This document shows positions 13,318 through 55,161 of a stretch of 64,000 nt of DNA, piece after piece. Under the pieces are notes generated by a model. It had not been told where the DNA came from. It did not search any database and saw only the letters and a program-made list of their open reading frames with translations. A program made the translations under genes and the position numbers. Numbering within the stretch: the stretch's first letter is position 1; each line of letters opens with the position of its first letter. Source of the DNA: Dimorphilus gyrociliatus (lineage: Eukaryota; Animalia; Annelida); NCBI GenBank assembly GCA_904063045.1, contig CAJFCJ010000022.1:703812-767811 (forward strand), given 5' to 3'.

Positions 13318-13836
13318 CCGAGAGAGGAAAAGATTGACAGGCACAGAGACCGACTTGAAGAGAGAGAGACAGAGAGAAATAAAGAAGAAAAAAAGCCCAT
13401 TGAATTAAGTTAGTTAATAAAGATATTTGTATAGATTGTCTATTTAATAGAGAACACACTCGACTAAATGGAAGTAAAATGCCTAAGAATTTGATAATTG
13501 ACAAATATTTTTGCAAAATTTCTTTTAGATTTAATAAGATTATAAAAGAAATTTTATGCCAGCATGAAAAACTGCTCCCGCTGACGAGTTTGTACTTGAA
13601 TTATTAATAAACTCGTAATTCACCGTATATAATTACCTCTGTAAGTTTATAGTAATAATCGATATAAATACTAATAATAACGCTTGAGATTACAGCCAAT
13701 AAATTAACCGTTGAATAAATCGTTTCTCGCTTCGTAAACACATTTGGTTTATTCCTATGACGCACGAAATCAGGGTCCTTTTCCAGAATATATCGGACCA
13801 AATAATTAGTTACATATTTTATATGGCTTCACAACG

Positions 13837-40991: not shown

Positions 40992-41003
40992 TCACTCACT
41001 CAC

Positions 41004-41045
<42 letters not shown>
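40992..41045. repeat. Compound (TCAC)n-(CT)n microsatellite
   Basis: Direct reading. Confidence 0.9.
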
Positions 41046-41048
<3 letters not shown>

Positions 41049-43827
41049 TACTCTATACTTCTCTCCTTTTGTCTACTTTTTACAAAATTCTCAACGCTTC
41101 TATAACAAGAAATCACAAACTTTTCAAGTTTACCTTTATTTATATGAAGGTGAGACAGGGGCGGAGCCTGAAGAGGCGGGAAGAGATGGAGACATTAAAC
41201 AGGAAATAATTTGATGCTATTTTGACTAGCAATTTACAAGTGTCACTTTTTCCCTTCTCGTCGTCTCTTCGACACCTCGACTTTATTAAATTAACTACTG
41301 CCTTTGTTCAATTAGACGCTACTTTTTAGCGTGTCGACAACTCAGTAGGGACCTCATGACGTCAGTTTATAAGGGATTTAAATTTCTAAAGTGTTCCCTC
41401 TGAATAAACTTGTCAGCGTGTGCCTACTTTTATTCAAGTGTTTATCTTCTCTTGTTTGTCTGTCGCCAGAAAAAATAGTTGTTTGTTTGTTTGTTTTATC
41501 AGATTTACAAGTTTTTCTTTAATTCTTCGTTCTTCCCTCCCTCAACAACAGGTGAAAAATAAGGTCTATTCCCTTTCGCTACTGTATATTTCTAACTATT
41601 AACTAGCTCTCAACTTTTCTCTTTCTCCTCCTCCCATCTCTCTCTCTCTCTATCTATCTATCTGTCTATATAGCTATTGGTCTATCTATTCGTCTATGCC
41701 TGTCTGTTTTTCTCACCACACGTGCTCGAGCGCAAGCAAAAGCACGTCCCACTGTCTTCTACCTTTTTACAACCAATAATGCAAATCAAACTAAGTCACG
41801 TGCGCCGGTACTCGTGACATTGACGCTTCCGCCGTTCCGGCGTCGTTTTCCAGTTAGACGCTCGTTAAGTTGTTGACGAGCGGGACGTCTAATTATTTAG
41901 TCGTCGAAACCCTAGACGCCCACCCATCGTAGAGCCGATTAAGAGGAAATTTTCTTTGTCGTTATGAGCTAAAAACGAAAATGATTGGGGAAAAATCGAC
42001 ATTCTTTTGACTATCGACGCCCTGCGGAGACTGAATAAAAGAATTTCCTTGTAGAGTGTGGCTCTTAACTAAACAACTTTAAGCTTTTCCTTCAACTTTT
42101 TATATACTTTACTTTGGACTCTTCAACTGTAACTCTAATTAATTTAACTCTGACTCTTAAACTTTCTTTTTCACCCTCTGCTTTCCGCTTCACAAACAAA
42201 CTTAACAAGGTCAACACAGATGATTTTAGCAGGCCTTTCTCCCTTCTATTTTTCCCTTTCTTTTCTCAAGAGCATTCTCTTTCTTATTAAAGAGACTGGA
42301 CAGACAGACGGGAGAAATTCCCTTTTCTACTTAATCCTCCACCCCAGTGTCTAATATCAGCTTTCCCGATGTGGAAGTTTAAGTAACGCCATCTGTAACG
42401 AGGGAAGGAGCGGCCGGTTCGAGAAGATCAACGAAGAAAGGTGGAAGAAAATGGAAGACAGAAATGAAGACAGAAAAAATGAACGACCGAGTGACTAAAA
42501 GAAGTAAATGAATAAGAGGGAAAAGATTGTTTTTGTGTATATAAGGAAATAATTAGAGTAATATAAAGAATGAAAGAACAGGATGATTAGATCTAATTTG
42601 CAAGAAATAATACGTTAATATGAGTAGACATAATCGTGAGGATTAGGAAAAACACGTAAGTAAATGACCATAAAATAGCCCGTCAGTTAGCATTCCCTAA
42701 ACAAGCTGAATCTTTTTGTCTATCATTTACCTTGTCCGCCCCGCCCTCCTTCCCTCTTTCTTCTTCTTCTTCTTCTTCTTCTTCTTCCTCTCCTTCTCCG
42801 CTTTGTTACTAACGAATCACATGAATATGCGCAATTTATATTGTTTACTTTTTGAAAGATTTCTTCGAAAATGTGTATTAGAGACGAATAAAAACTATGT
42901 AAAGAATACTAATAGGCCTACCGGGACAAGAGAAAGAAAAAAAGAAAGATAGAGAGAGGGAACGCATCTCTCTTCTCTCCCTTTTTAATTCGATTTGAAT
43001 ACGAAAAAAGAAGAAAATATCTATAAAAGCTTTTGTTTCGTCTTTTCTAATGAGAATATCGTCCAATTTCTATACTTTCTATACCGTAACATGCCATTGC
43101 GATATATAAATATTCACTTGGTCTTTTGACCTCTTCTTAGTCAGTACCTCTTGCCATCTGTTGGCTATAAATGTATTCAACTTCCTCTTCAGGGCAGTTA
43201 ATATCCAAGTATTCGAAGAGTTTCTCGTTTTCAAGAGCATTAAGGAAGGTGCTGTAGTCCTATAGTGGGAGAGGGAAAGAGAGAAAAACAAATTGAAAAT
43301 AGACGCCATAATCGAATAGAGATAGATACATTCATTCTAATGGGTTGAATGTTTTTTGGTTAGTAACAACTTACGCCACGGTTTATATCGCCGTTGAATA
43401 TCTGAGGAGGACTTAGCAGCATGTCTAATAGTTTCTCTTTTTCTTTTACAGTTTGAGGTCTACCAACGTCCACCTCGACGAAAGAGATCTTCTTCGACTC
43501 GAAAACTCTCTTTATATGATCTTGATGACTTTTCATCTAGAATCATTTGATAGAATTATCATAGCTAATCTCTTTTCGAGATAATTCCCTCTTCCCTCAT
43601 TAATTTACGAAACAAACCTGTAAATTACCACAGTCTTTCGAAACCAACAGTTTTAAGACCATCCTTTACGGCGAAAACGAAAAAAAAAACTACTAGTGCA
43701 GTTGATGCTGCATCTAATATTTGGATTTTCTATTTTTATACACGGATACATAAGATACTCGGCCGACACCACACACATACACACATACACACGCGTATAA
43801 ACGTAAAAAAACTTTATTCTTTGATCG

Positions 43828-43843
43828 TAGCGCCACCTATTGT
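43828..43843 (-). promoter_or_regulatory. CTCF-like site (reverse) between trh and snail
   Basis: The minus strand reads ACAATAGGTGGCGCTA versus CCACTAGGTGGCGCTA (2 mismatches). Confidence 0.45.
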
Positions 43844-44108
43844 ACTTTGTTTCTTTTTTATAATTTATCTCCCTCACCCATCCCCAATCAGTCGTTTCCG
43901 CGAAATGTTAATTATGTCTTAATAGGAAACTCAATTATGCTAAGTTTGTCTTTCCTCTTTAAAATCGACCTACTTCTATTTACGGCCAAATCGCAAGAAA
44001 AGTGTTATGCCCATAGTGGAAGAAGTGCCCGTTAGTTGTCGCCCTCTTCCCCTCTCTGGTCTTTTCCATACTCGGTAGATGTCGCTCTCTATTGGTTTAA
44101 AACCCTAT

Positions 44109-44110
<2 letters not shown>

Positions 44111-44145
<35 letters not shown>
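44111..44145. repeat. (GA)17 microsatellite
   Basis: Direct reading. Confidence 0.95.
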
Positions 44146-44148
<3 letters not shown>

Positions 44149-44355
44149 GAGATAAAAAGAATTTCACTGTTGAACACTGGAAGTAAAATTTGAACAGAAA
44201 CATCGTCCATTGTAAACAGTTTTATTAACTTTTTGTTTATATTCTCATGTTTTTTTTTAAAAAAAAAAGTTCTTTTCTTTTGCGAAAAGAAGAGATTTTT
44301 CTAAGCAAGTACCCTTCGCCATCTACATCAAAGTTGGAAGGTGCCTGTGATGTGG

Positions 44356-44374
44356 TAGCGTCATCTAGCGGTGA
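44356..44374 (-). promoter_or_regulatory. CTCF-like site (reverse) between trh and snail
   Basis: The minus strand reads TCACCGCTAGATGACGCTA; the core is one mismatch from CCGCTAGATGGCGC. Confidence 0.5.
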
Positions 44375-47142
44375 AGAAAAAGACTTGTAAAAGTTCTAGT
44401 TAGTTAAAGCGAGAGAAGATGGCAATCAATTTTTATTAGAAAATTAGGCGTATAAAAATAGGAGTAATCTCTAACAAACCTAGCAAACATTTGATTTCAT
44501 CCATATTCGCTAGTGAATCAGGCTAATTTGTTGATTGGAGCAAAACGCGCTTGATGCAGTTTTCAAGAGGCTACTGCATCTGTGCGCTCGTTTACGCTAA
44601 TTTCGTTACTGTCCAGTTCCAGCTTTATGCGCATTTACTACGGGCAATAAAATCTATATATCAGCGTCCAAGTTTTTTTAGACTATTTTTTCATTCTTCA
44701 CGCAGAAGAAAAAATCTTTGGCACGTAAATGAAGTTACAAATTTTGTAGCTACTTTGTTTATCGTTTATATCGTCCTAGACGACTGATTTTTATAAATCG
44801 TTTAACTTTCTTTATCTCTCTTTCTTTCTTTCTTTCTTTCTTTCTCTCTCTCTCTCTACCTCTTCGCTTAAATTCAACTCGATTCGTTTACGACCAGTTT
44901 TCGTCGCCCTTCATAAATCATCTATTGATGGAGGAGAGAAAAATTGATCATCAAATGGAGAAATGGAGAATATATCTAATTTTTGTCTACACCAATCCTT
45001 TTGAAGACAGATTTAGAGATTTAGAGAAACGGCAATATTCGGGGAGAAAGAGCAAAGAAGAAAAAGAAAAATACAGTAAAAAAAGGATAAAAGCAGGTGT
45101 AGTACAAATAAGAAGAGGAGGAACAGGATTTCTATGGCCAAGTGCAGTCTGTAGAGCACGTGCAGAAATTTTGCAGTTGTCCGAAATTTATATTCATTTG
45201 CGTCCAAGAGAATTTTTTCTGTACCTTACTCTAATCATTTGGTACAGTTTCTATGGACATTGTAGTAAATATATTGAAGGCATTGAAGGTATTGAAAAAT
45301 TCCTCTTTTCTCTATAACTAATCAACCGCAAACAGTTGTAGTGTTGTTAATGGGTACATTTTGCAAGTTTTATCTAATATTTCTTAATCAAAATTGCCTA
45401 TAATAGCCTAATGATGCGCATAGAGATGGACTGAAAAAGGCGGGAAAGGAATAAAGAAATGCCGACGGCAAACTTGGAGACGTTTGTCAACGCGATAATC
45501 TATCATTCGTTTGATTATTTTCGTATACAAGTGTTTATAGTTTGCTCGTAGAACGTTCTCAGCTTGATTTATTGATTTGGCAGTTCCCGTAAAATGCAAT
45601 TCCAATTCTTTCATTTTTCTCTTTTTCTACTATTTTCTTTCCTTCTTCCTTCCTTCTCTAGCTCTTCCATTAATTGTAATAAATAAAAAAAATGGTCAAA
45701 ATTCTACTCAATCCTTCCGCCGCTCCTCCCTTTTAATACACTACTACTTATTCAATCGCTTCAAAATCACTACTGAAACAAGCAAACAAATAGGCCTAAT
45801 TTTGGAATTAAATGCCATTCCAATTACTGTAAAGACGGAAAGAGAAGATAGTTTTATTTTGAAAAGATCCACTAAATCTTTTTTCTCGCTCTTTTCTTCT
45901 TCCTAGACGGAATGGTTGAGCTAGTGAGTGATCTAACACGGAGCGATATTGGCTTTTACCTATTTTCCTCTGTCTGCTTGTTCGTCTCTTTTTAAAACTT
46001 TCCCTCCTAAAAGGAAAACTGACGACGTGTAACGGGATTACATAATATCACAAAGTGATGTAATAGACGGGCTCAGCTGGCGCGCGAGGAGTCAGAAGAG
46101 GTCGATGTCTGCTAATTTCTTGGGCAAACAAGTGAATGAAATTGTGGAAAATTTGATTTGACGAATCAGAGAGAATCGGGCGTGAGAATGAGTTGAGATT
46201 TTGTTTTTCTACTTTTATTGTGATACGTGTGCGGAGGAATTTTTCAGAAAAAATATAATAAATCAACCTGCGAACGTTGCACGTGCGATTTCGAAATGGC
46301 GCACGCTCCAATACAACTGTCGGGCCTTATCAGCTGTCGAGAAATGTATACATACATTTTTCCAGTCTTCTTTTTCTCCTTCTCCCAAAAAATCTTTCAA
46401 CTATTCGCAAGAGAAAGGGAAGAAGAAGTGACCAACGCAACAGCTACTACCCAACTCCGAAACTAAAAAGTCCCAGGAGGAGGAGAAATTTTTCCACCTT
46501 ATTTACCAAACATCGCCGCATCATTAGACTCTACGTTAATGCAATTCTTAAAGAGCAAACCGCTCAATGTTTCTATTGCAAAATACTGCACGCTCACAAA
46601 AACAATTTTACAAACGCGCAGTCTACTTCTTTGCCACAGTCCATCTCTCTCTCACCCTTCTTGCATTGTCCGCAACTTTTCGTTACTGTCAATCAAATTA
46701 TGCATCTTCCAACCGTCCCTTCGTCAACCTATTATTCCATCTATCCATCCATCCATCCATCCTTCTCATCCAGAATGATGCGAAATTGAAAAAACACACA
46801 TAAACACTCGCGTACACACATACACAGACATACGTATACAAACAGAGTCGAATTTTCGCAATAATAAACGCTTAGTGTAACGAATAAGGCAATTAGAATA
46901 AATTGAGCTACTTTATACGCTTACAGAAGCGGTTTGATCTTTTACAGTCATTTGCGGTAAGCACGTGCAAAACTGACAAACGCTTCTGTTCATCTATGGG
47001 AAAATACGAAAATCGGCGCGAGTAAATTGAATTTAGTATAGAAAGACGACTATTCGCCGTATTTTGACAATTCCCATAATATTGTTTAGTCAAGCCACCT
47101 GCGGATTTTTTTGGCGAAAACTAAGATTTTCGTCGCTGCTCT

Positions 47143-47243
47143 CTGATTGGACAACATTTTTAATCAGTCGGCCGATTCCCATACGCTGATTGGCTGTTGG
47201 GTATTCTATAAGAGCCGCCTCGTGCTTAGATAACGGTATAGTT
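47143..47243 (+). promoter_or_regulatory. Putative snail core promoter: two CCAAT boxes, TATA-like box and Inr-like element
   Basis: CTGATTGG at 47143-47150 and 47186-47193, TATAAGA at 47207-47213, ATAGTT at 47238-47243 (about 33 nt after the TATA), ATG 27 nt after the putative +1 (47240). Motif arrangement only; no transcript evidence. Confidence 0.5.
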
Positions 47244-47266
47244 ACGCCCAAGGCAGTCGGTATCTT

Positions 47267-48807
47267 ATGCAGAAAATCATCGTCAAAAGTGCTATGGAGG
47301 AGGAGGACGAATTTATTGACGTCGTCTCTACTGAGAAGGAAATACCATCGACACCAAAAGAAAAAACGCCAGGTAGACGTCAATTTCTTTATTTTCTCTT
47401 TGTGCAATTATTTTCTAATTATAGAGTAAACTATAATTCTAGACTTATAAATCTTGATAAATAGCGGTGAGAACGGAGAAATTTGTCCATCAACCTCGGG
47501 TTTTCATTAACTTTTCTTTTTTCTTTTCCACTATGACCGTTCTCCTTTCAGTTTCTTCATTTCATACTATTTCGGATTGTATATATTTCTATCTTCTGTA
47601 ATAATTATGTTCATTTCGTCTTTGCTATATCTTGCAGCATCTCTAGCTGTGTTGTTCTCTCTTGAAACCTCTCCCTCTCCCATTTCCCCCTCCAATTTCT
47701 CCTTTAATAACCATATAGAAAAAATTATACATGGCGTGTTAAGCCTACATTTACATATATACTGTATATACAAATTAGAACATTAATCAGCGGCTTTATA
47801 GAGAATAAAGAGTCGGAGTTAGAAGAATATAACAAGTACGCGTGCGTAGGTGTGGCGGTGTGGCCGTGCGAGACGAATTGAATAATTGAATGTTATTTCT
47901 TCGTATATACACACTCTATACTTGTATATTGTATATTGGATTTATTCGACTCGAGTGCCGTTACGTTCTTCTCGTGTATTCTATGTATTCAAGGTATTAA
48001 ATTATGAGAGGGAGGGGGCCCAGAGAACCGCGTCGAGAGGGAAATTGTTCAAGATTAACCAGTTTCGTTCGTTTGTTCGTCGGCCGTTCAAGCAAACATT
48101 TTTCATTTCATTTATGATCAATCATTCAACGTTGTTTTCTTCTTTCTTTCTATCTAGCCGTCTTCCGCATTGCCGATATTTTATCGAAACCTAGCAAGCC
48201 CGACGAAATATACAACTTTTGGAATATACCTCGACCGCCACCTCCGTTTTTGATGAACCCCTACTTTCAGTCACACCTTCTTCCCTATCAAATACCTCCA
48301 AGATTTTATCCTTCACCGCCTTTTAACACGGAAGTCCGTAAAAAGAAGCCAGAAGTTGCATCGGCAAATATCAAATATACTTGTGAATCTTGCGGTAAAG
48401 CCTACGCAACTTTTAGTGGCTTGTCGAAGCATAAACAATTCCATTGCTCAGCAGAACACGGTAAAAAGGAATTGTCCTGCAAATACTGCAATAAAACCTA
48501 CACATCTTTGGGGGCTCTTAAGATGCATATAAGAACGCATACGCTACCGTGCAAGTGTCGATTGTGCGGAAAAGCTTTTTCCAGACCCTGGCTTCTGCAA
48601 GGTCACATTCGTACTCATACAGGAGAGAAGCCGTTCAGTTGTGCACATTGTGGAAGGGCGTTTGCGGATAGGTCGAATTTAAGAGCTCACCTCCAAACTC
48701 ACTCAGACGTTAAGAAGTATTCATGTTCAACTTGTTCAAAAACTTTTTCTCGAATGAGTCTATTAACAAAACACAGAGATTCTGGCTGTATTGGATTGGT
48801 TCGATAA
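47267..48807 (+). CDS. sna: Snail-family C2H2 zinc-finger repressor (snail/escargot type), 2 exons, 251 aa
   Basis: Exon 1 47267-47372 (in-frame stop upstream; CCAG|GTAGAC, phase 1) and exon 2 48158-48807 (polypyrimidine-CTAG acceptor, phase 1) total 756 nt. Five fingers carry Snail signatures [53 protein letters not shown] and FSRMSLL. The zinc-finger call is near certain; the exon 1 join is somewhat less so. Confidence 0.94.
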
Positions 48808-48854
48808 TTATATACTTTTATATATTTGGTGCTTATCATCATCTTTACTCTCCC

Positions 48855-48856
<2 letters not shown>

Positions 48857-48886
<30 letters not shown>
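48857..48886. repeat. (CT)15 microsatellite in the presumed snail 3' UTR
   Basis: Direct reading, 50 nt after the snail stop codon. Confidence 0.95.
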
Positions 48887-48889
<3 letters not shown>

Positions 48890-51096
48890 CCCGCTCTTTT
48901 CCGTCGATTCCTATTCATTTCCATTCTAGATGAGCAGATAAAAAATTTGGGAAAAAACAATGAAACTAAAAACAACATAATTTATATAGAAAATGAAATT
49001 GGAAATGAATAGATTAAAAGAAACTTGTACATTTTGTAAAAATTCAAAACATAAAAAATGAAACAAATATGCAGTCGAATAATAAAAATGAAGAAAAAAA
49101 ATGCCAAATAGAGAATAATCAATTTAGAATTTACAGTAAAAATCGTATTTTAAAAACACTTAACAAAATATATAACAAAACTGGAAAAAAGAGTTAATTT
49201 ATCAATTTTTTTCTATTTTTCCAGTTTTGCAGTAGATTCTCTCACTCTTTTCGGACAAAAAAAAATGTCAAGAAATGTTCTTCTTATTTCTTCTTTGTTC
49301 AATATAATAAACTTAAGTTTGTTAAAATTGACATACAAACAAAGCATGTAGTAGAAAGAACCAAACAGGACATAGAAGAGAGACTTGGTCGACCTTTAAC
49401 GATGCTTTTTCTCTTCTTTGTTGGTGAAAAATTATGTTATTGAATTAAAATTTTTAAATGGAGAATTTTGAATTGAATTGAATTATTCTATTTTTAGTTT
49501 TAAGCAAATTTTTAAAATTCAGTCTCTTGTCATTTTTCCGGCCATCTTTCTCTAATCTTCTCTACTTTCAGTAGGCAAGGAGAAAACGAGAATATTTTAT
49601 ATAACTGTATATGTTTGTACTTGGAAGAGAGGATGGAGAGAGAGGAAGAGAGAACAGGCTACTAATCCAAACAGAAATATTGTTTTTGTTTTCCTTTTAC
49701 CTCCCCAACATTACTAGTTTGCCATTTATAATAAAGTTCTTAATTCGATATATTATCGATACGATTTGACATAGAAAAAGACACGTGATTGATTACGAAA
49801 CGAGCAAATAAACTGGGAGAGTTTTTATTACACAATCAAAAAGGTTTCGTAATCGTTGAAAATGTTAGCGTGTGCGTCTGTTTGATGGCGTGTGTTTAAG
49901 TGTATCTGCTAAATTTTGTCGGCCGCTCCAATCTCTCCAGGAGGAGAGAAAGAAAGATGGAAAGAAAAGATAGAAGGAAGAAGAGTACAAAGAATCTTAT
50001 ACAAACCATTAAAGAGATGTCTGCACAAATGTGCACATTTCTTTACAACATGTCTACCGTAAATAAACAAACAAAGACTAACCCCTCAACGCAACTTTGT
50101 AGACGTCGGCTACAGTTTCCACTTGCGCAAGAGAAACATTCGATAAAATCAAGCCACCCAATGCAATACGCGGTATTATCCACCTAATCCTTATAGATGG
50201 AGGCGTTGACAGCTTATTGACTCACCTGCATAATAGACGTCCGAATGCCTGTCGCGATGTCTATGCATAAATCGATACGATTAACTATTCGAATTGCGAA
50301 AACAGTGTATATTTCTTGTCCGTCCATGTAGAACAGGTGTTGCGTGGTGTGGGAGGAGGCAATAGAGTAAAGAAAGAGGAGAAAGGGCAATCGAAAGAAA
50401 ATTCTCTCCTCTCATTTTTTCTCACTTTCCACCTCCTCGTATCCCTCCCCCCTCTCTTTCTTTCTTCCCACCTTTCCTGCTTCCGTCCGTAAAACATCCG
50501 AAACGGATCGCTACTGCCGTTTTCTTTCAAAATGACAAGTTGACAAGAGTTAACAGAGATAAATAGATAGATAGGCAGATAGACAGATAGACAGATCGTG
50601 TGAGAAAAAGATAGATAGAGATGGACATAGAGGGAGCGGTGGAAGAAGGTGGGAACGGAGGGCGGATTTGAGAACGGGAAGGAGGGAGAAAGGAAGAGAA
50701 GGAGAGGGGGAAGAAGACGAAGAAGAAAAAGAAAAAGACAAGGTGAAGCACTAATAATCGCTTCGATTATCAAATTTATTCGTCTGCGTTGCAGATTAGA
50801 TTTTACTTGGAAAAGCTTTTTTTTCTTTATATTATATAGGCCTTAATTTGATTCGTGTAACCTATGGGGTTCTTGCATCTGCTTAGTGTTTTCATCTGCT
50901 TTACTTTTTTTATTTGTTTTCTTTTAAGACATATACCGAATGATATTGTTTTAACTTCAAATCAACTTTATTCGTATCGCTTTTAGGTCTTTTTTTTTTT
51001 CATTTCATCTTCTTATTCTTCTTCTTCTTCTTCTTTCTTCTATTAGTAAATATTCTCTTGTAGCCATCGGTTCGCTTATCCGTCAGTCCGTCGGTC

Positions 51097-51119
51097 CATT
51101 CATTCATTCATTCATTCAT

Positions 51120-51155
<36 letters not shown>

Positions 51156-51180
51156 CCGCCCGTCCGTTCGTCCGTCCGCC
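51097..51180. repeat. Graded tetranucleotide array (CATT)n to (CATC)n to (CGTC)-like units
   Basis: Direct reading. Confidence 0.9.
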
Positions 51181-53440
51181 TATCCGTCTCTCCATTCGTT
51201 CGTTTATGCCCTTATTTATTTTTTTACCGTGTTTATTTATACAATTTTATTCAAATTACTTTACATCATCTTGGATAAATTCTTGGAAACATATATTATA
51301 TCGAAAATCTATTTGTGCATATGTACATTCACAACTGCTACAAGACAATAAGACAATAAAGCAGGTTAGCTTCCAAGAGTACAGAGAGAGAGAGAGAGAG
51401 AGAGAGAAAGAATCGCTGCTTAATCCAATTACAAAATCTGTTTGCTTTAATTAAAAAGAACAGAGAATTTTATTCTTTTACTTTTGATAAATGTATTTTT
51501 AATGAAGTAAAAATATAAAAACATAATAATAATAAGAATATTCGTGTAAAAAAGAAACAAGAAGCCTCCTCCCGAGAATTCAATCAAACGCCTCTTGCTA
51601 AAAAACGTTTGCTGCAGCTGACAAACATCAAACGCTTCAACAGGTGCGGCCGTTTTAAGCGGCAATTAAACGCTGCCGAAACGGGCGTTTGATGTCTGAC
51701 AGTGGGAATATTTAGGATACGAACGAAATTCTTTTATTCCCTATCGTTCTTGGAAAGTTAATGAGAAGATAAATAGAGAATGAAAAGGGAGGGGAGGCTA
51801 ACACGGCTTGCAATCCACTGAAGATTAGGTCGAAGGCGGTGACTTTACAGGGCTAAAACGAATAAGAGAAGAACGGACTATCGAGCTAGAGAGAGTGAGA
51901 GACATGGTTAATATCGGAATGCTATAGAGAGAAATGAAAATGATTTCCGTTGGCAAACTTTTTCTCTCAGACAAGGATACGAGAATAAGAAAATACGAGC
52001 AAATCTTACAAATGATTATTACAGGTGCCAATGAGTACTAGGAACAGTTGGAAACAAATAATCCAAGTTTCATTAATGAAAGTTTACGTAAATTAAATAA
52101 AATCCGGTCGACAATTTATGTAAATGAACGCCTCGAAGCGTTAAATTGAACACCAGCTATCTCGGCGGGACGTCACTTTTGGACGACTATTAACCGAGTA
52201 GATCGTGCAGATAACGCCAGCTTATTGTTGGATTACGTCATCGATTGGATTTAATTTCTAGATTATGAGAATTTTCATTACAAGAATATTATAATTATAT
52301 TTAACGTTCTATTTTTTTCTTTTTTATCAAAAACTTTTCATTTCGTGAAATTCAATAGGAAGAAAACTTTTACGCGCCGTATAACCATACGCCTTTCCCC
52401 TTTGTATCTGTGACTCCCCTTCTCTCTCTCTCTCCCTTCTTCCATATCTATATCTCTCCTACTCTTTGATCATTGAGCTCTACTCTTCTCATTCCCCCAA
52501 CACCTAAATATATGCAGTCGATACATGTGCGTCTATTGAACACCAGCATTTGCCACTTGAATATTCTACGCCATACAACAAACAACCACCATTTTATCAA
52601 TATTATCCGTTCATTCATTCGTTCGTTCATCTATCCATCTCTTTAAAATTTTCAAACTTGTCCATCTTCCCTTTTATATTCTCCAAACATGTCTCATCTA
52701 TTCACTCATTCATGCGCTTGAATGCTTACTATTCCCTTAAACGCTTATATCCTGCTGATTCTTATGTAAATGTATTAGTCTAACGCCTAAGCAGTAGAAA
52801 TGACAACAGTCCTTTTTGACGGCTTGCTCATTTCTTACACTGGCTAATCTCGTCGCAATTCATCTCTCCGCAGTCTCCCCTGACGTCATAGATTGTTGCG
52901 TAAGAGAAGAGATGAAACGTGTCTATATATAAGTTTTGGTATTCGTTACAAGTTACAGGTTATATTACGTATACCTACTGAAAATATATATATATATATA
53001 TATATGCTGTATATATGTGTGTGTACTGGCAGTGTTCTTTCGCTACTGTATAAATATATCGTTTCTATAATTACACTATGGTGTAATCTTATTATGTCAC
53101 GCTGGTAACAAAATTTCATAAAATTTCTCATCGTTCACGGATTACACATGTATAAACTTCAAAATCGAACTTGTATATGCAGCATCTGTATGTTCGATGA
53201 TACTTGAACAATAAAAGAGATGCGCAGGTTGCGGAAATCTTGTTCGAACCGATTATGCAAATAAAGATTATGTTAATTTGACCAGATGCATGCTTTGAAC
53301 CTTGTTTACATTTTATCGGTACAACTTATCGATTGATTCTATTATATCTTTTACATGTTCAAATGAACAATATAGATTGGTGTAGTCAAACTACACGTAC
53401 TCTTATCTCTTGCTTGGAGAATTTTCATTCCTTGGTGTTG

Positions 53441-53455
53441 TGGCGCCATCTATTG
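53441..53455 (-). promoter_or_regulatory. CTCF-like site (reverse) between the convergent 3' ends of snail and RXR
   Basis: The minus strand reads CAATAGATGGCGCCA, containing the AGATGGCGC core. Confidence 0.4.
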
Positions 53456-53495
53456 CCTATTTTACTCGTTAAACAGGAAGATAGCTTTACGGAGG

Positions 53496-53528
<33 letters not shown>

Positions 53529-53743: not shown

Positions 53744-55161
53744 TTAACTTTTCCCGTGGCAATGTTGATTGTAATCGAGAATTTCGATAAGAAAATTATC
53801 TATAGGTGTGTCACCGATCAACTTCAAAAAGAACAAGTGTTCAATACACTTTAAGCCTATCGATCGGAGAGTAGGCAATCGGAGGAGAAGCATAGCAAAC
53901 CGACCGGGCTCTTTTGGATATTTTTGCTTACAATATTCTTCCAGATTGCCGTAGACCTTTTCCCTGAGAGATTCAATCTTTCTAGCGTCTCTTAGACCCT
54001 TCGCGTCTGGATTAAAGAGAATAATTGTCCTGAGACATCCCAATTCGGTCTTGTCCATTTTCATATGTCTCATTTTAGCGACTAGCTCTGTTAGGACCCT
54101 GTCGAATACAACACCAACGCCCGCCTGATGGGCGGAGGAGCGATGTATATGGAGACCAGTTGAAAGCAAAAGACCTTCCTCGACTGCCACACTTCTATGG
54201 CAAAAGTTGATGATAAGTAATTCATTCCAACTAGACTTGAGGAGGGCAACCTATTAAAAAGTAATGGATAAGAGAAAACATAAAAGTGGAGTAAATGGTT
54301 AAATGGATGCGAGAAAGGATAGATCGATAAATAGATATAGATAAATGAACCGATGAATTTCAAAGGAGAAAGAGTGATAAAAGAGCAAAGGATAAATAGG
54401 AGTTTTGTTATTTAGATATCGTTCGTTTAGGAGACTAAGCTTTGGAAAATAGTTTACTTGCCTGATCTTTAAGATTTAAATCAATAAAATGTGGAATTCT
54501 CTTTGCCCAATCGACTAGTGAAACGAGTTGGTGGTCGGCCGCTTGGCAAATGTTTTGAATGGCGTTATCAGGGGCATCTATGTACGTGTCATTAACCGGC
54601 TCAACCGCTAGTTGAGCATTCAAAATCTTTTCGAGCGGCATATCAGAATTAACTGACGTGGAAGATTCCACTTGATCTTCATTATTCTTGTCCTTAGCCT
54701 TCTGCCTCTCTTCCTGAACAGCCTCTCTTTTCATACCAATTCTCAGGCATTTCGAGTAGCGACAGTACTGACATCTGTAACTCAATACGATTAGAAATAT
54801 TGAAACGATTTTTGAACGATTTGACTAGAGGGGTGAAGAGAAGGAGTAGGGCGTTGATAAGGAAGATGAGGTTAACTAGAGATAAGAGAGTTGATGAAAT
54901 TTGTTAAGAGTACAGTGAATGGGCAAGACAAGATAGAAATTAAACTGAAATAGAATGAAAGCAGACAGTCACCTGTTTCGTTGTCTTTTATCGACAACGC
55001 AGTTCCTTTCGTCCCTGCAGACATATGTGAGATCCTTACGAACCGTTCTTTTAAAAAATCCCTTGCATCCTTCGCACGAGTAAACTCCGTAGTGCTTGCC
55101 AGACGACCTATCTCCACAGATGGCGCATAGATCTTTCGAAGGGGAAATTTGAATTGGAGGA
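53744..55161 (-). CDS. RXR: Retinoid X receptor / ultraspiracle (NR2B) nuclear receptor, DBD and LBD exons; 5' end not located
   Basis: Exons 54973-55161 ([62 protein letters not shown]), 54462-54774 ([25 protein letters not shown]...[17 protein letters not shown]) and 53744-54250 ([12 protein letters not shown]...[14 protein letters not shown]...FLIEILD). The P-box CEGCKG, T-box and AF-2 are RXR-type. Confidence 0.97.

What the first reader, a model, noticed from the sequence alone, without database searches (positions are those of the whole stretch)
47267..48186. Snail with an apparent co-repressor swap: SNAG degenerate, no CtBP motif, but an eh1 (Groucho/TLE) motif
Seen: the predicted N-terminus is MQKIIVKS instead of the SNAG consensus MPRSFLVKK. 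The Pro-Arg and Phe are lost and only the hydrophobic-V-K tail remains. An upstream in-frame stop and adjacent promoter motifs suggest this is the real start. No PxDLS occurs in the 251 aa. Exon 2 begins with FRIADILS (48163-48186), fitting the eh1 consensus FxIxxIL. Known: Snail proteins repress via SNAG-LSD1/CoREST (needing the free N-terminal PRSF that mimics histone H3) or via CtBP (PxDLS); eh1 recruits Groucho in homeodomain, Fox, Tbx and odd-skipped proteins. I do not know eh1 as part of the standard Snail architecture. Inference: this lineage rewired Snail repression to Groucho, which would change its range and mechanism. This is my best candidate for something undescribed here.
Basis: partly seen in the sequence, partly recalled or inferred. 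Interest (0 to 1): 0.72.

Follow-up and report, generated by a model that had tools for sequence, protein, structure and literature searches.

The report
Annelid Snail gene with Groucho-type motif
This is the annotated Snail repressor gene of the tiny annelid Dimorphilus gyrociliatus; it lacks the usual SNAG and CtBP docking sites and carries a well-formed, species-conserved eh1 (Groucho-docking) motif, a plausible but untested co-repressor swap that already has precedents in related zinc-finger proteins.

Summary
The window encodes DgyrCDS13005 of Dimorphilus gyrociliatus: 251 aa, two exons (47267-47372 and 48158-48807) and five Snail-type C2H2 fingers. A spliced transcript contig uses the 47372|48158 GT..AG junction. 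An orthologous locus from a related species (L001, dS about 1.45) keeps the start codon, both splice sites and the reading frame.

The N-terminus is MQKIIVKS. No MPRxF-type ORF lies upstream, and there is no PxDLS. FRIADIL (residues 38-44) fits the eh1 consensus and sits in a predicted disordered region.

The motif is unchanged in the related species despite four synonymous changes in residues 36-47. Residues 1-47 are more constrained than the 48-108 linker (1/47 against 8/61 changes, one-sided p=0.04).

Caveats:
- A strict eh1 match arises in about 1% of shuffles of this N-terminus, and a looser match in 3%.
- No deeper orthologue could be found.
- Groucho binding is untested.

The idea is not new. 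C. elegans CES-1 (Snail-like) and Drosophila CG15269 scored as eh1 candidates in Copley 2005. Bilaterian Fezf lost SNAG and carries an eh1. SNAG was lost about 11 times in the superfamily.

Verdict: a likely lineage-specific eh1 acquisition (about 0.5), a new variant of a known kind, of moderate interest.

The parts
47145..47214 (+). Core promoter: two inverted CCAAT boxes (GATTGG at 47145-47150 and 47188-47193) and a TATA box (TATAAGAG at 47207-47214).
   Evidence: Read directly. All three elements are conserved in the related species L001. Transcript contig depth is 0 in 47016-47209 and about 55 in 47210-47403.
47267..47372 (+). Exon 1 coding part (residues 1-35 plus the first base of codon 36). 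It encodes MQKIIVKS, an acidic [10 protein letters not shown] patch and a TP-rich stretch. An alternative start lies at 47294 (Met10).
   Evidence: Only one amino-acid change (A9V) against L001, with about 10 synonymous changes. A 2-nt indel just upstream of ATG1 breaks the frame there.
47373..48157 (+). Intron, 785 nt, GT..AG, phase 1.
   Evidence: Skipped by an X2 contig. Not alignable to L001, whose intron is about 1250 nt, while both splice sites are kept.
48158..48807 (+). Exon 2 coding part (residues 36-251 plus the stop codon).
   Evidence: Identical to P0001/DgyrCDS13005.
48163..48186 (+). eh1-like motif FRIADILS (residues 38-45).
   Evidence: Amino acids are identical in L001, with 4 synonymous differences estimated across residues 36-47, three of them within these eight codons. 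Lies in a region with pLDDT below 50 and no secondary structure.
48193..48381 (+). Proline- and aromatic-rich linker and basic patch (residues 48-110). This is the least constrained part of the protein.
   Evidence: 8 of the 10 amino-acid differences to L001 fall here, dN 0.066.
48382..48789 (+). Five Snail-type C2H2 zinc fingers (residues 111-246).
   Evidence: Pfam zf-C2H2, 5 stretches, E=5.8e-28. Invariant finger columns are shared with named Snail/SNAI2 proteins. AlphaFold pLDDT 72-91.
48808..49149 (+). 3' UTR (approximate end). Contains a (CT)n tract near 48850-48890.
   Evidence: X2 contig depth is 54-79 up to bin 48956-49149, then falls to 4-7. Sequence.

Best explanation
This is the expressed, two-exon Snail-subfamily gene of Dimorphilus gyrociliatus (DgyrCDS13005). 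Its five C-terminal zinc fingers are canonical, so it most likely binds E-box-type sites as other Snails do (inferred from family knowledge).

Its disordered N-terminal part has lost the canonical SNAG hook. Pro2, Arg3 and Phe5 are gone. Gln at position 2 would also keep the initiator Met, which is incompatible with the histone-H3-mimic mode of LSD1 binding (inference from the published SNAG-LSD1 mechanism). It has no CtBP motif.

The only recognisable repression motif is FRIADIL at residues 38-44. I take this to be a functional eh1 motif that docks as a short helix into the WD40 pore of Groucho/TLE, making this Snail a Groucho-dependent repressor. The motif most likely arose within the dinophilid lineage by ordinary short-linear-motif turnover.

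Shown: the gene model, its expression and splicing, the absence of SNAG and CtBP motifs, the presence of the motif, the disorder, and purifying selection.
Inferred: Groucho binding and its role in repression.
For: - Identity and model.
- Splice and transcription.
- No MPRxF-type ORF on the + strand near the gene; the only loose match in the window is MPKNL at 13479, 34 kb away.
- Promoter, ATG and splice sites are conserved in L001, with a frame-breaking indel just upstream of the ATG.
- Motif quality: a strict eh1 match occurs in only 1% of shuffles, and F.I.[DNES]IL in 0.05%.
- Accessibility: residues 1-108 are predicted disordered.
- Selection: dS 1.45 and dN 0.026 overall. Residues 36-47 have 0 amino-acid changes and 4 synonymous changes. 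Residues 1-47 have 1 change against 8 in residues 48-108, one-sided p=0.04.
- Precedents: CES-1 eh1 plus a UNC-37 interaction, and CG15269; Fezf with SNAG lost and an N-terminal box gained; repeated SNAG loss.
- A conserved eh1-like motif in two nemertean Snails.
Against: - By composition alone it appears in 1-3% of shuffles.
- Conservation could be tested in one relative only, and it does not single the motif out from the rest of residues 1-47 (p=0.33).
- The N-terminal 110 aa has no detectable relatives among 1.84 billion representatives or in the word search.
- Other Snail N-termini carry eh1-like matches at about the chance rate: 5 observed against 3.4 expected.
- AlphaFold predicts no helix for the motif in isolation.
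- There are no binding or repression data.
Confidence: 0.5

Rival explanations
1. Chance hydrophobic patch. FRIADIL is a fortuitous match inside a conserved N-terminal region. This Snail represses by other means, for example through its fingers, unknown motifs or competition for E-boxes.
For: - 1-3% of composition-preserving shuffles give an eh1 match.
- Other Snail N-termini match at about the chance rate.
- The motif is no more conserved than the rest of residues 1-47.
- There are no deep orthologues.
Against: - The match is to the strictest form of the consensus, including Asp at position 5 and Ser after the motif (0.05% of shuffles).
- It is under purifying selection at near-saturated dS.
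- No alternative repression motif is present.
- Eh1 candidates have been reported in Snail-related proteins.
Confidence: 0.3
2. The motif is functional but serves another partner or role, such as a degron, a nuclear export or localisation signal, or part of a larger conserved N-terminal module. That module would include the acidic [10 protein letters not shown] patch, which resembles a SUMO-interaction motif.
For: - The whole of residues 1-47 is constrained, not just the motif.
- A similar acidic [FY]-[IV]-[DE]-[IV] patch occurs near the N-terminus of Capitella and Lottia Snails.
Against: - FRIADIL does not fit the usual export-signal spacing (my own reading of the sequence).
- Eh1 is the best-described ligand class for this pattern in transcription factors (Copley 2005).
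Confidence: 0.12
3. The N-terminus is mis-modelled. An upstream exon supplies a canonical SNAG, so there is no co-repressor swap.
For: - Only one transcript contig shows the 5' part, and contigs cannot show transcript starts.
- One X2 contig has an unexplained 255-nt loose end at 48134.
Against: - No MPRxF-type ORF lies upstream on the + strand.
- Conserved CCAAT and TATA elements sit 50-120 nt upstream of the ATG, and there is no contig depth upstream of 47210.
- An in-frame stop lies upstream, and a 2-nt indel just before the ATG separates the two species.
- The loose end has no AG acceptor and is absent from the window.
- The public annotation uses the same start.
Confidence: 0.03

Closest known systems
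Snail subfamily of the Snail/Scratch superfamily (e.g. Lottia goshimai Snail1, amphioxus SNAI2, Tribolium Escargot)
   Same: Five C-terminal C2H2 fingers with the Snail-type sequence, a basic patch before finger 1 and a disordered N-terminus. Identity over the fingers is 65-85%, and the best database hits are all Snail, SNAI2 or Escargot.
   Different: No canonical SNAG-1 (MPRSFLVKK), no PxDLS, and an eh1-like motif instead. The protein is very short, at 251 aa.
C. elegans CES-1 (Snail-like) and Drosophila CG15269 (Snail-related outgroup)
   Same: C2H2 repressors of or next to the Snail superfamily with an eh1 candidate. CES-1's is N-terminal, scored 11.2 bits and CES-1 was reported to interact with UNC-37/Groucho. 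CG15269 scored 10.6 bits (Copley 2005; Kerner 2009 uses CG15269 as outgroup).
   Different: They belong to different subfamilies and phyla, and their motifs are not positionally homologous, so the Dimorphilus motif would be an independent gain. I did not have their sequences in hand to align.
Fezf (Fez family zinc finger)
   Same: A related C2H2 family with the same inverse pattern. Non-bilaterian members have SNAG. Bilaterian members lack it and carry a conserved N-terminal box (Irimia 2010). Copley 2005, citing Levkowitz 2003, reports an eh1 motif essential for repression in zebrafish Fezl.
   Different: In Fezf the exchange is ancient and conserved across Bilateria. Here it is seen only in Dimorphilus and one close relative.
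Insect Snail/Escargot with CtBP (PxDLS) and Ebi (PLKKR) motifs
   Same: Snail proteins that replaced or supplemented SNAG with other short co-repressor motifs. The beetle hits carry PENLS/PEDLS pairs.
   Different: The co-repressor differs, Groucho rather than CtBP or Smrter. The Dimorphilus protein has neither PxDLS nor PLKKR.

Membership tests
Snail subfamily (Snail/Scratch superfamily) | Four to six C-terminal C2H2 fingers with the Snail-type sequence | tested here: met
   Pfam zf-C2H2, 5 stretches. Invariant columns are shared with named Snail proteins. Top hits are Snail, SNAI2 or Escargot at 257-282 bits.
Snail subfamily (Snail/Scratch superfamily) | Groups with Snail rather than Scratch | tested here: inconclusive
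   All named best hits are Snail-type. Fingers 1-2 read ...[13 protein letters not shown] and ...[12 protein letters not shown], as in the aligned Snails. No tree with Scratch sequences was built because none were in hand.
Snail subfamily (Snail/Scratch superfamily) | N-terminal SNAG-1 (MPRSFLVKK); ancestral but often lost | tested here: not met
   The N-terminus is MQKIIVKS in both species. There is no upstream MPRxF ORF. Kerner 2009 infers about 11 losses, so absence does not exclude membership.
CtBP-dependent Snails | PxDLS-type motif | tested here: not met
   No P.[DN]L[SRT] in the 251 aa.
eh1-motif, Groucho-dependent repressors | Match to the eh1 core F-x-I-x-x-I-L | tested here: met
   FRIADIL at residues 38-44 matches both the strict and the ELM-like pattern. 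It appears in 1% and 3.2% of shuffles respectively.
eh1-motif, Groucho-dependent repressors | Lies outside the DNA-binding domain in an accessible, disordered region | tested here: met
   AlphaFold pLDDT about 45-50 and no secondary structure for residues 1-108.
eh1-motif, Groucho-dependent repressors | Motif conserved among orthologues | tested here: inconclusive
   Identical in L001 at dS about 1.45, but so is nearly all of residues 1-47. No more distant orthologue was found.
eh1-motif, Groucho-dependent repressors | Motif-dependent binding to the Groucho/TLE WD40 domain | not testable with these tools
   No complex prediction or experiment is available here. The presence of a groucho gene in this genome rests only on unchecked first-reader notes.
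SNAG-LSD1/CoREST repressors | Free N-terminal Pro-Arg-Ser-Phe that mimics the histone H3 tail | tested here: not met
   Residues 2-5 are Q-K-I-I. That this prevents LSD1 binding is inferred from the published mechanism and was not tested.

The most novel reading that the evidence does not exclude
The SNAG degeneration may not be an accident of one gene. It may be part of a lineage-wide shift in Dimorphilus. Unchecked first-reader notes report a second Snail gene whose SNAG 'degenerated into an eh1 motif', and a Gfi gene with an internalised, degenerate SNAG. If all SNAG-family repressors of this miniaturised, compact genome have given up the LSD1/CoREST hook and moved to Groucho, that would be a coordinated co-repressor rewiring. 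It might be linked to loss or change of LSD1/CoREST.
Probability: 0.1. Interest if true: 0.7.

Novelty: new variant of a known kind. Interest (0 to 1): 0.36.

Why it matters
Snail proteins are central repressors in mesoderm formation, epithelial-mesenchymal transition and neurogenesis. The co-repressor they recruit affects their mode of repression, and Groucho, CtBP and LSD1 are different kinds of co-repressor. A bona fide Snail that uses an eh1 motif would add a clean, recent example of co-repressor exchange by short-motif turnover, in a tractable annelid with a compact genome. Together with CES-1, CG15269, Fezf and the nemertean candidates, it would suggest that Groucho recruitment is a recurrent solution after SNAG loss. 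It would not overturn current understanding, because such turnover is expected and has precedents.

Tried and rejected
- Tandem paralogue: tblastn of the protein against the window found only the gene itself.
- Upstream SNAG exon: a six-frame scan for MP[RK].[FWYL] found only one unrelated site, at 13479.
- Relatives of the N-terminus: a word search of residues 1-105 and 1-47 and a full HMMER scan of residues 1-110 returned only self and a 32-aa exon-1 fragment (P0122). They also returned a spurious 2736-aa tandem-repeat protein, P0121 (124 bits summed over many weak repeats; BLASTP E=0.26 per repeat)..
- Metagenome scan: it found two Snail loci (L003, L004=P0005) that share only the linker and the fingers and have no eh1.
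- Second Snail paralogue: I could not fetch it. It is known only from first-reader notes, and the protein searches list only the best 120 hits. The findings search by sequence was blank.
- Source organism of L001: I could not identify it. The run accessions appear in no paper in the library.
- X2 loose end at 48134: rejected as an alternative exon. There is no AG acceptor, and its 27-nt end is absent from the window.
- Structure: AlphaFold of the monomer added only that the N-terminus is disordered.
- General Snail feature: rejected the idea that eh1 is common in Snails. Observed 5 of 119 against 3.4 expected.

Full report
**What is there**

The region 47267-48807 on the + strand holds a two-exon gene. 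Exon 1 (47267-47372) begins with ATG, 12 codons after an in-frame TAG, and reads MQKIIVKS followed by an acidic patch and a TP-rich stretch. It ends before GT. Exon 2 starts after AG at 48158 in phase 1, so codons 48163-48186 read FRIADILS and the frame runs on to a stop at 48805-48807.

The joined 251-aa product is identical to the public protein DgyrCDS13005 of the annelid Dimorphilus gyrociliatus (P0001). The exon-2 product has five C2H2 fingers (Pfam zf-C2H2, E=5.8e-28). Its best relatives, at 257-282 bits, are proteins named Snail, SNAI2 or Escargot from insects, molluscs, a nemertean, hemichordates and amphioxus. In an alignment with 13 of them the finger columns are almost invariant, while the N-terminal parts do not align at all. 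tblastn finds no second copy in the window.

**Is the gene model right?**

- Transcript evidence: run X2 is served as contigs and its kind is not on record. Depth is about 100 over exon 2, about 55 over the exon-1 bin, 5-13 in the intron and 0 in 47016-47209. That pattern is typical of RNA. One contig joins 47372 to 48158 with GT..AG. Only 28 letters lie on the exon-1 side, so I do not rest on it alone.
- Orthologous locus: the search for relatives of the N-terminus produced a 32-aa exon-1 fragment (P0122). Its Logan contig L001 (4266 bp, SRR23372229) proved to be the orthologous locus of a related organism. Exons and three upstream blocks are 83-87% identical, and the intron is unalignable.
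- What L001 keeps: in both species the two inverted CCAAT boxes, the TATA box (47207-47214), the roughly 50-nt leader, the ATG, CAG|GT and AG|CC are kept. A 2-nt indel immediately upstream of the ATG breaks any upstream frame.
- Upstream SNAG exon: a six-frame scan found no MPRxF-type ORF upstream on the + strand.

One caveat remains. ATG1 has a poor context (C or T at -3), whereas the ATG of Met10 (47294) has G at -3 and +4 in both species. Leaky scanning could give a protein starting MEEEDEF. Neither start gives a SNAG.

**State of the known repression motifs**

- SNAG: the N-terminus lacks Pro2, Arg3 and Phe5 of the SNAG hook. From the published SNAG-LSD1 mechanism I infer that it cannot bind LSD1 in the canonical way. 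This was not tested.
- CtBP: there is no PxDLS-type motif, whereas the beetle Snails in the hit list carry PENLS/PEDLS pairs.
- How unusual is this? SNAG loss is common. Kerner et al. 2009 infer about 11 independent SNAG-1 losses, and Platynereis Snail2 has no SNAG. Among the 120 hits only four start with MPR[SA]F, and none of these is a spiralian.

**The eh1-like motif**

- Match and background: VFRIADILS fits the strict core F.I..[IL][LIM] and an ELM-like pattern. In 200,000 shuffles of this protein's own 110-aa N-terminus, the ELM-like pattern appears in 3.2%, the strict core in 1.0% and F.I.[DNES]IL in 0.05%. Among the other 119 Snail N-termini, 5 match the loose pattern (3.4 expected) and 1 matches the strict one (0.2 expected). 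Eh1 is therefore not a general Snail feature.
- Structure: AlphaFold predicts residues 1-108 as disordered, with pLDDT about 45-59 and no secondary structure. That is the usual setting for a short linear motif, but it is no positive evidence for binding.
- Selection: against L001, dS is 1.45 and dN 0.026 over the whole gene. The two organisms are well diverged and the protein is under strong purifying selection.
  - Residues 36-47 have no amino-acid change and four synonymous changes.
  - Residues 1-47 have one change (A9V).
  - Residues 48-108 have eight changes, and the fingers have one.
  - The N-terminal 47 aa are more constrained than the linker (one-sided Fisher p=0.04).
  - The motif is not distinguishable from the rest of residues 1-47 (p=0.33).

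**Search for deeper conservation**

This search failed. Residues 1-105, 1-47 and 1-110 have no relatives in the word-indexed or exhaustive protein libraries, apart from P0122 and a spurious repeat protein. A metagenome scan gave only Snail loci that share the linker and fingers and lack eh1. Capitella, Lottia, Littorina, Argopecten and other spiralian Snails in hand have no such motif. The motif therefore looks derived within the dinophilid lineage.

**What is already known**

- Copley 2005 (PMC1310626) found that the highest-scoring eh1 match among C2H2 proteins of fly, worm and human is the N-terminus of C. elegans CES-1, a Snail-like repressor reported to interact with UNC-37/Groucho.
- The supplement of that paper also lists Drosophila CG15269 at 10.6 bits. 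Kerner 2009 uses CG15269 as the outgroup of the Snail superfamily.
- Irimia 2010 (PMC2942887) describes non-bilaterian Fezf with SNAG, and bilaterian Fezf without it but with a conserved N-terminal box. It cites the proposal that SNAG losses in Snail/Scratch accompany the gain of other co-repressor motifs.
- Copley, citing Levkowitz 2003, notes that zebrafish Fezl has an eh1 essential for repression.
- I found no paper describing eh1 in a Snail-subfamily protein proper, and nothing on Dimorphilus snail.

**Verdict**

My best explanation, at confidence about 0.5, is a lineage-specific gain of a functional Groucho-docking eh1 motif in a Snail that had lost SNAG and never had CtBP sites.

The main rival, at about 0.3, is a chance match inside an N-terminal module conserved for other reasons. 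A different function for the motif gets about 0.12, and a mis-modelled N-terminus about 0.03.

This is a new variant of a known kind. Interest is moderate.

**Leads from other first-reader notes (unchecked)**

The same genome is said to hold a second Snail gene with 'SNAG degenerated into an eh1 motif', a Gfi with a degenerate internal SNAG, and a groucho gene. I could not fetch those sequences. If they are confirmed, the more interesting reading is a genome-wide move of SNAG-family repressors away from LSD1.

Noticed in passing
P0032 residues 144-157; P0023 residues 152-165: The Snail of the nemertean Tubulanus polymorphus and a related transcript share an eh1-like motif 27-28 aa before finger 1 (KLPFSVESLTADL and RHPWSIESIMEETR). 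The surrounding N-terminal sequence is otherwise poorly conserved. P0095, from an unidentified animal, has LNPFSIHALLSDD. These may be independent eh1-like motifs in Snail-subfamily proteins.
   Followed up: partly
window 47297-47329 (residues 11-21): The acidic patch [10 protein letters not shown] is conserved in L001. A similar [DE]n-[FY]-[IV]-[DE]-[IV] patch lies near the N-terminus of Capitella (DEEQDYVDIE) and Lottia goshimai Snail1 (MEYIEIDV). It may be a spiralian Snail motif, and it resembles a SUMO-interaction motif.
   Followed up: partly
window 46006-46370, 46467-46615, 46834-47266: Upstream non-coding blocks are 86-87% identical to L001, although dS is about 1.45 and the intron is unalignable. 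They are likely conserved promoter and enhancer elements of snail.
   Followed up: partly
window 47294 (Met10) versus 47267 (Met1): The second ATG has a much better initiation context (G at -3 and +4) than the first, in both species. Two N-terminal isoforms by leaky scanning are possible.
   Followed up: no
window 48134: One X2 contig matches from 48134 onwards but carries 255 unrelated letters before it. There is no AG acceptor, and the end of the loose part is absent from the window. It is probably a chimeric contig at the T/C-rich tract.
   Followed up: partly
window 48205-48459: A 255-nt contig from a marine metatranscriptome (X1) covers this stretch with four differences. The three listed (C>T at 48264, 48276 and 48336) fall at third codon positions. 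This is an environmental variant of the same gene.
   Followed up: partly
window 53744-54785, minus strand: Exons of a nuclear hormone receptor lie here (Pfam Hormone_recep E=2.5e-21, and the end of zf-C4). The ...[10 protein letters not shown] stretch after the DNA-binding domain looks RXR/USP-like. This is the gene next to snail on its downstream side.
   Followed up: partly
window about 41000-53500: Snail sits alone in roughly 12 kb with no other long ORF. That is a large gap for this compact genome and fits a developmental gene with extended regulatory DNA.
   Followed up: no
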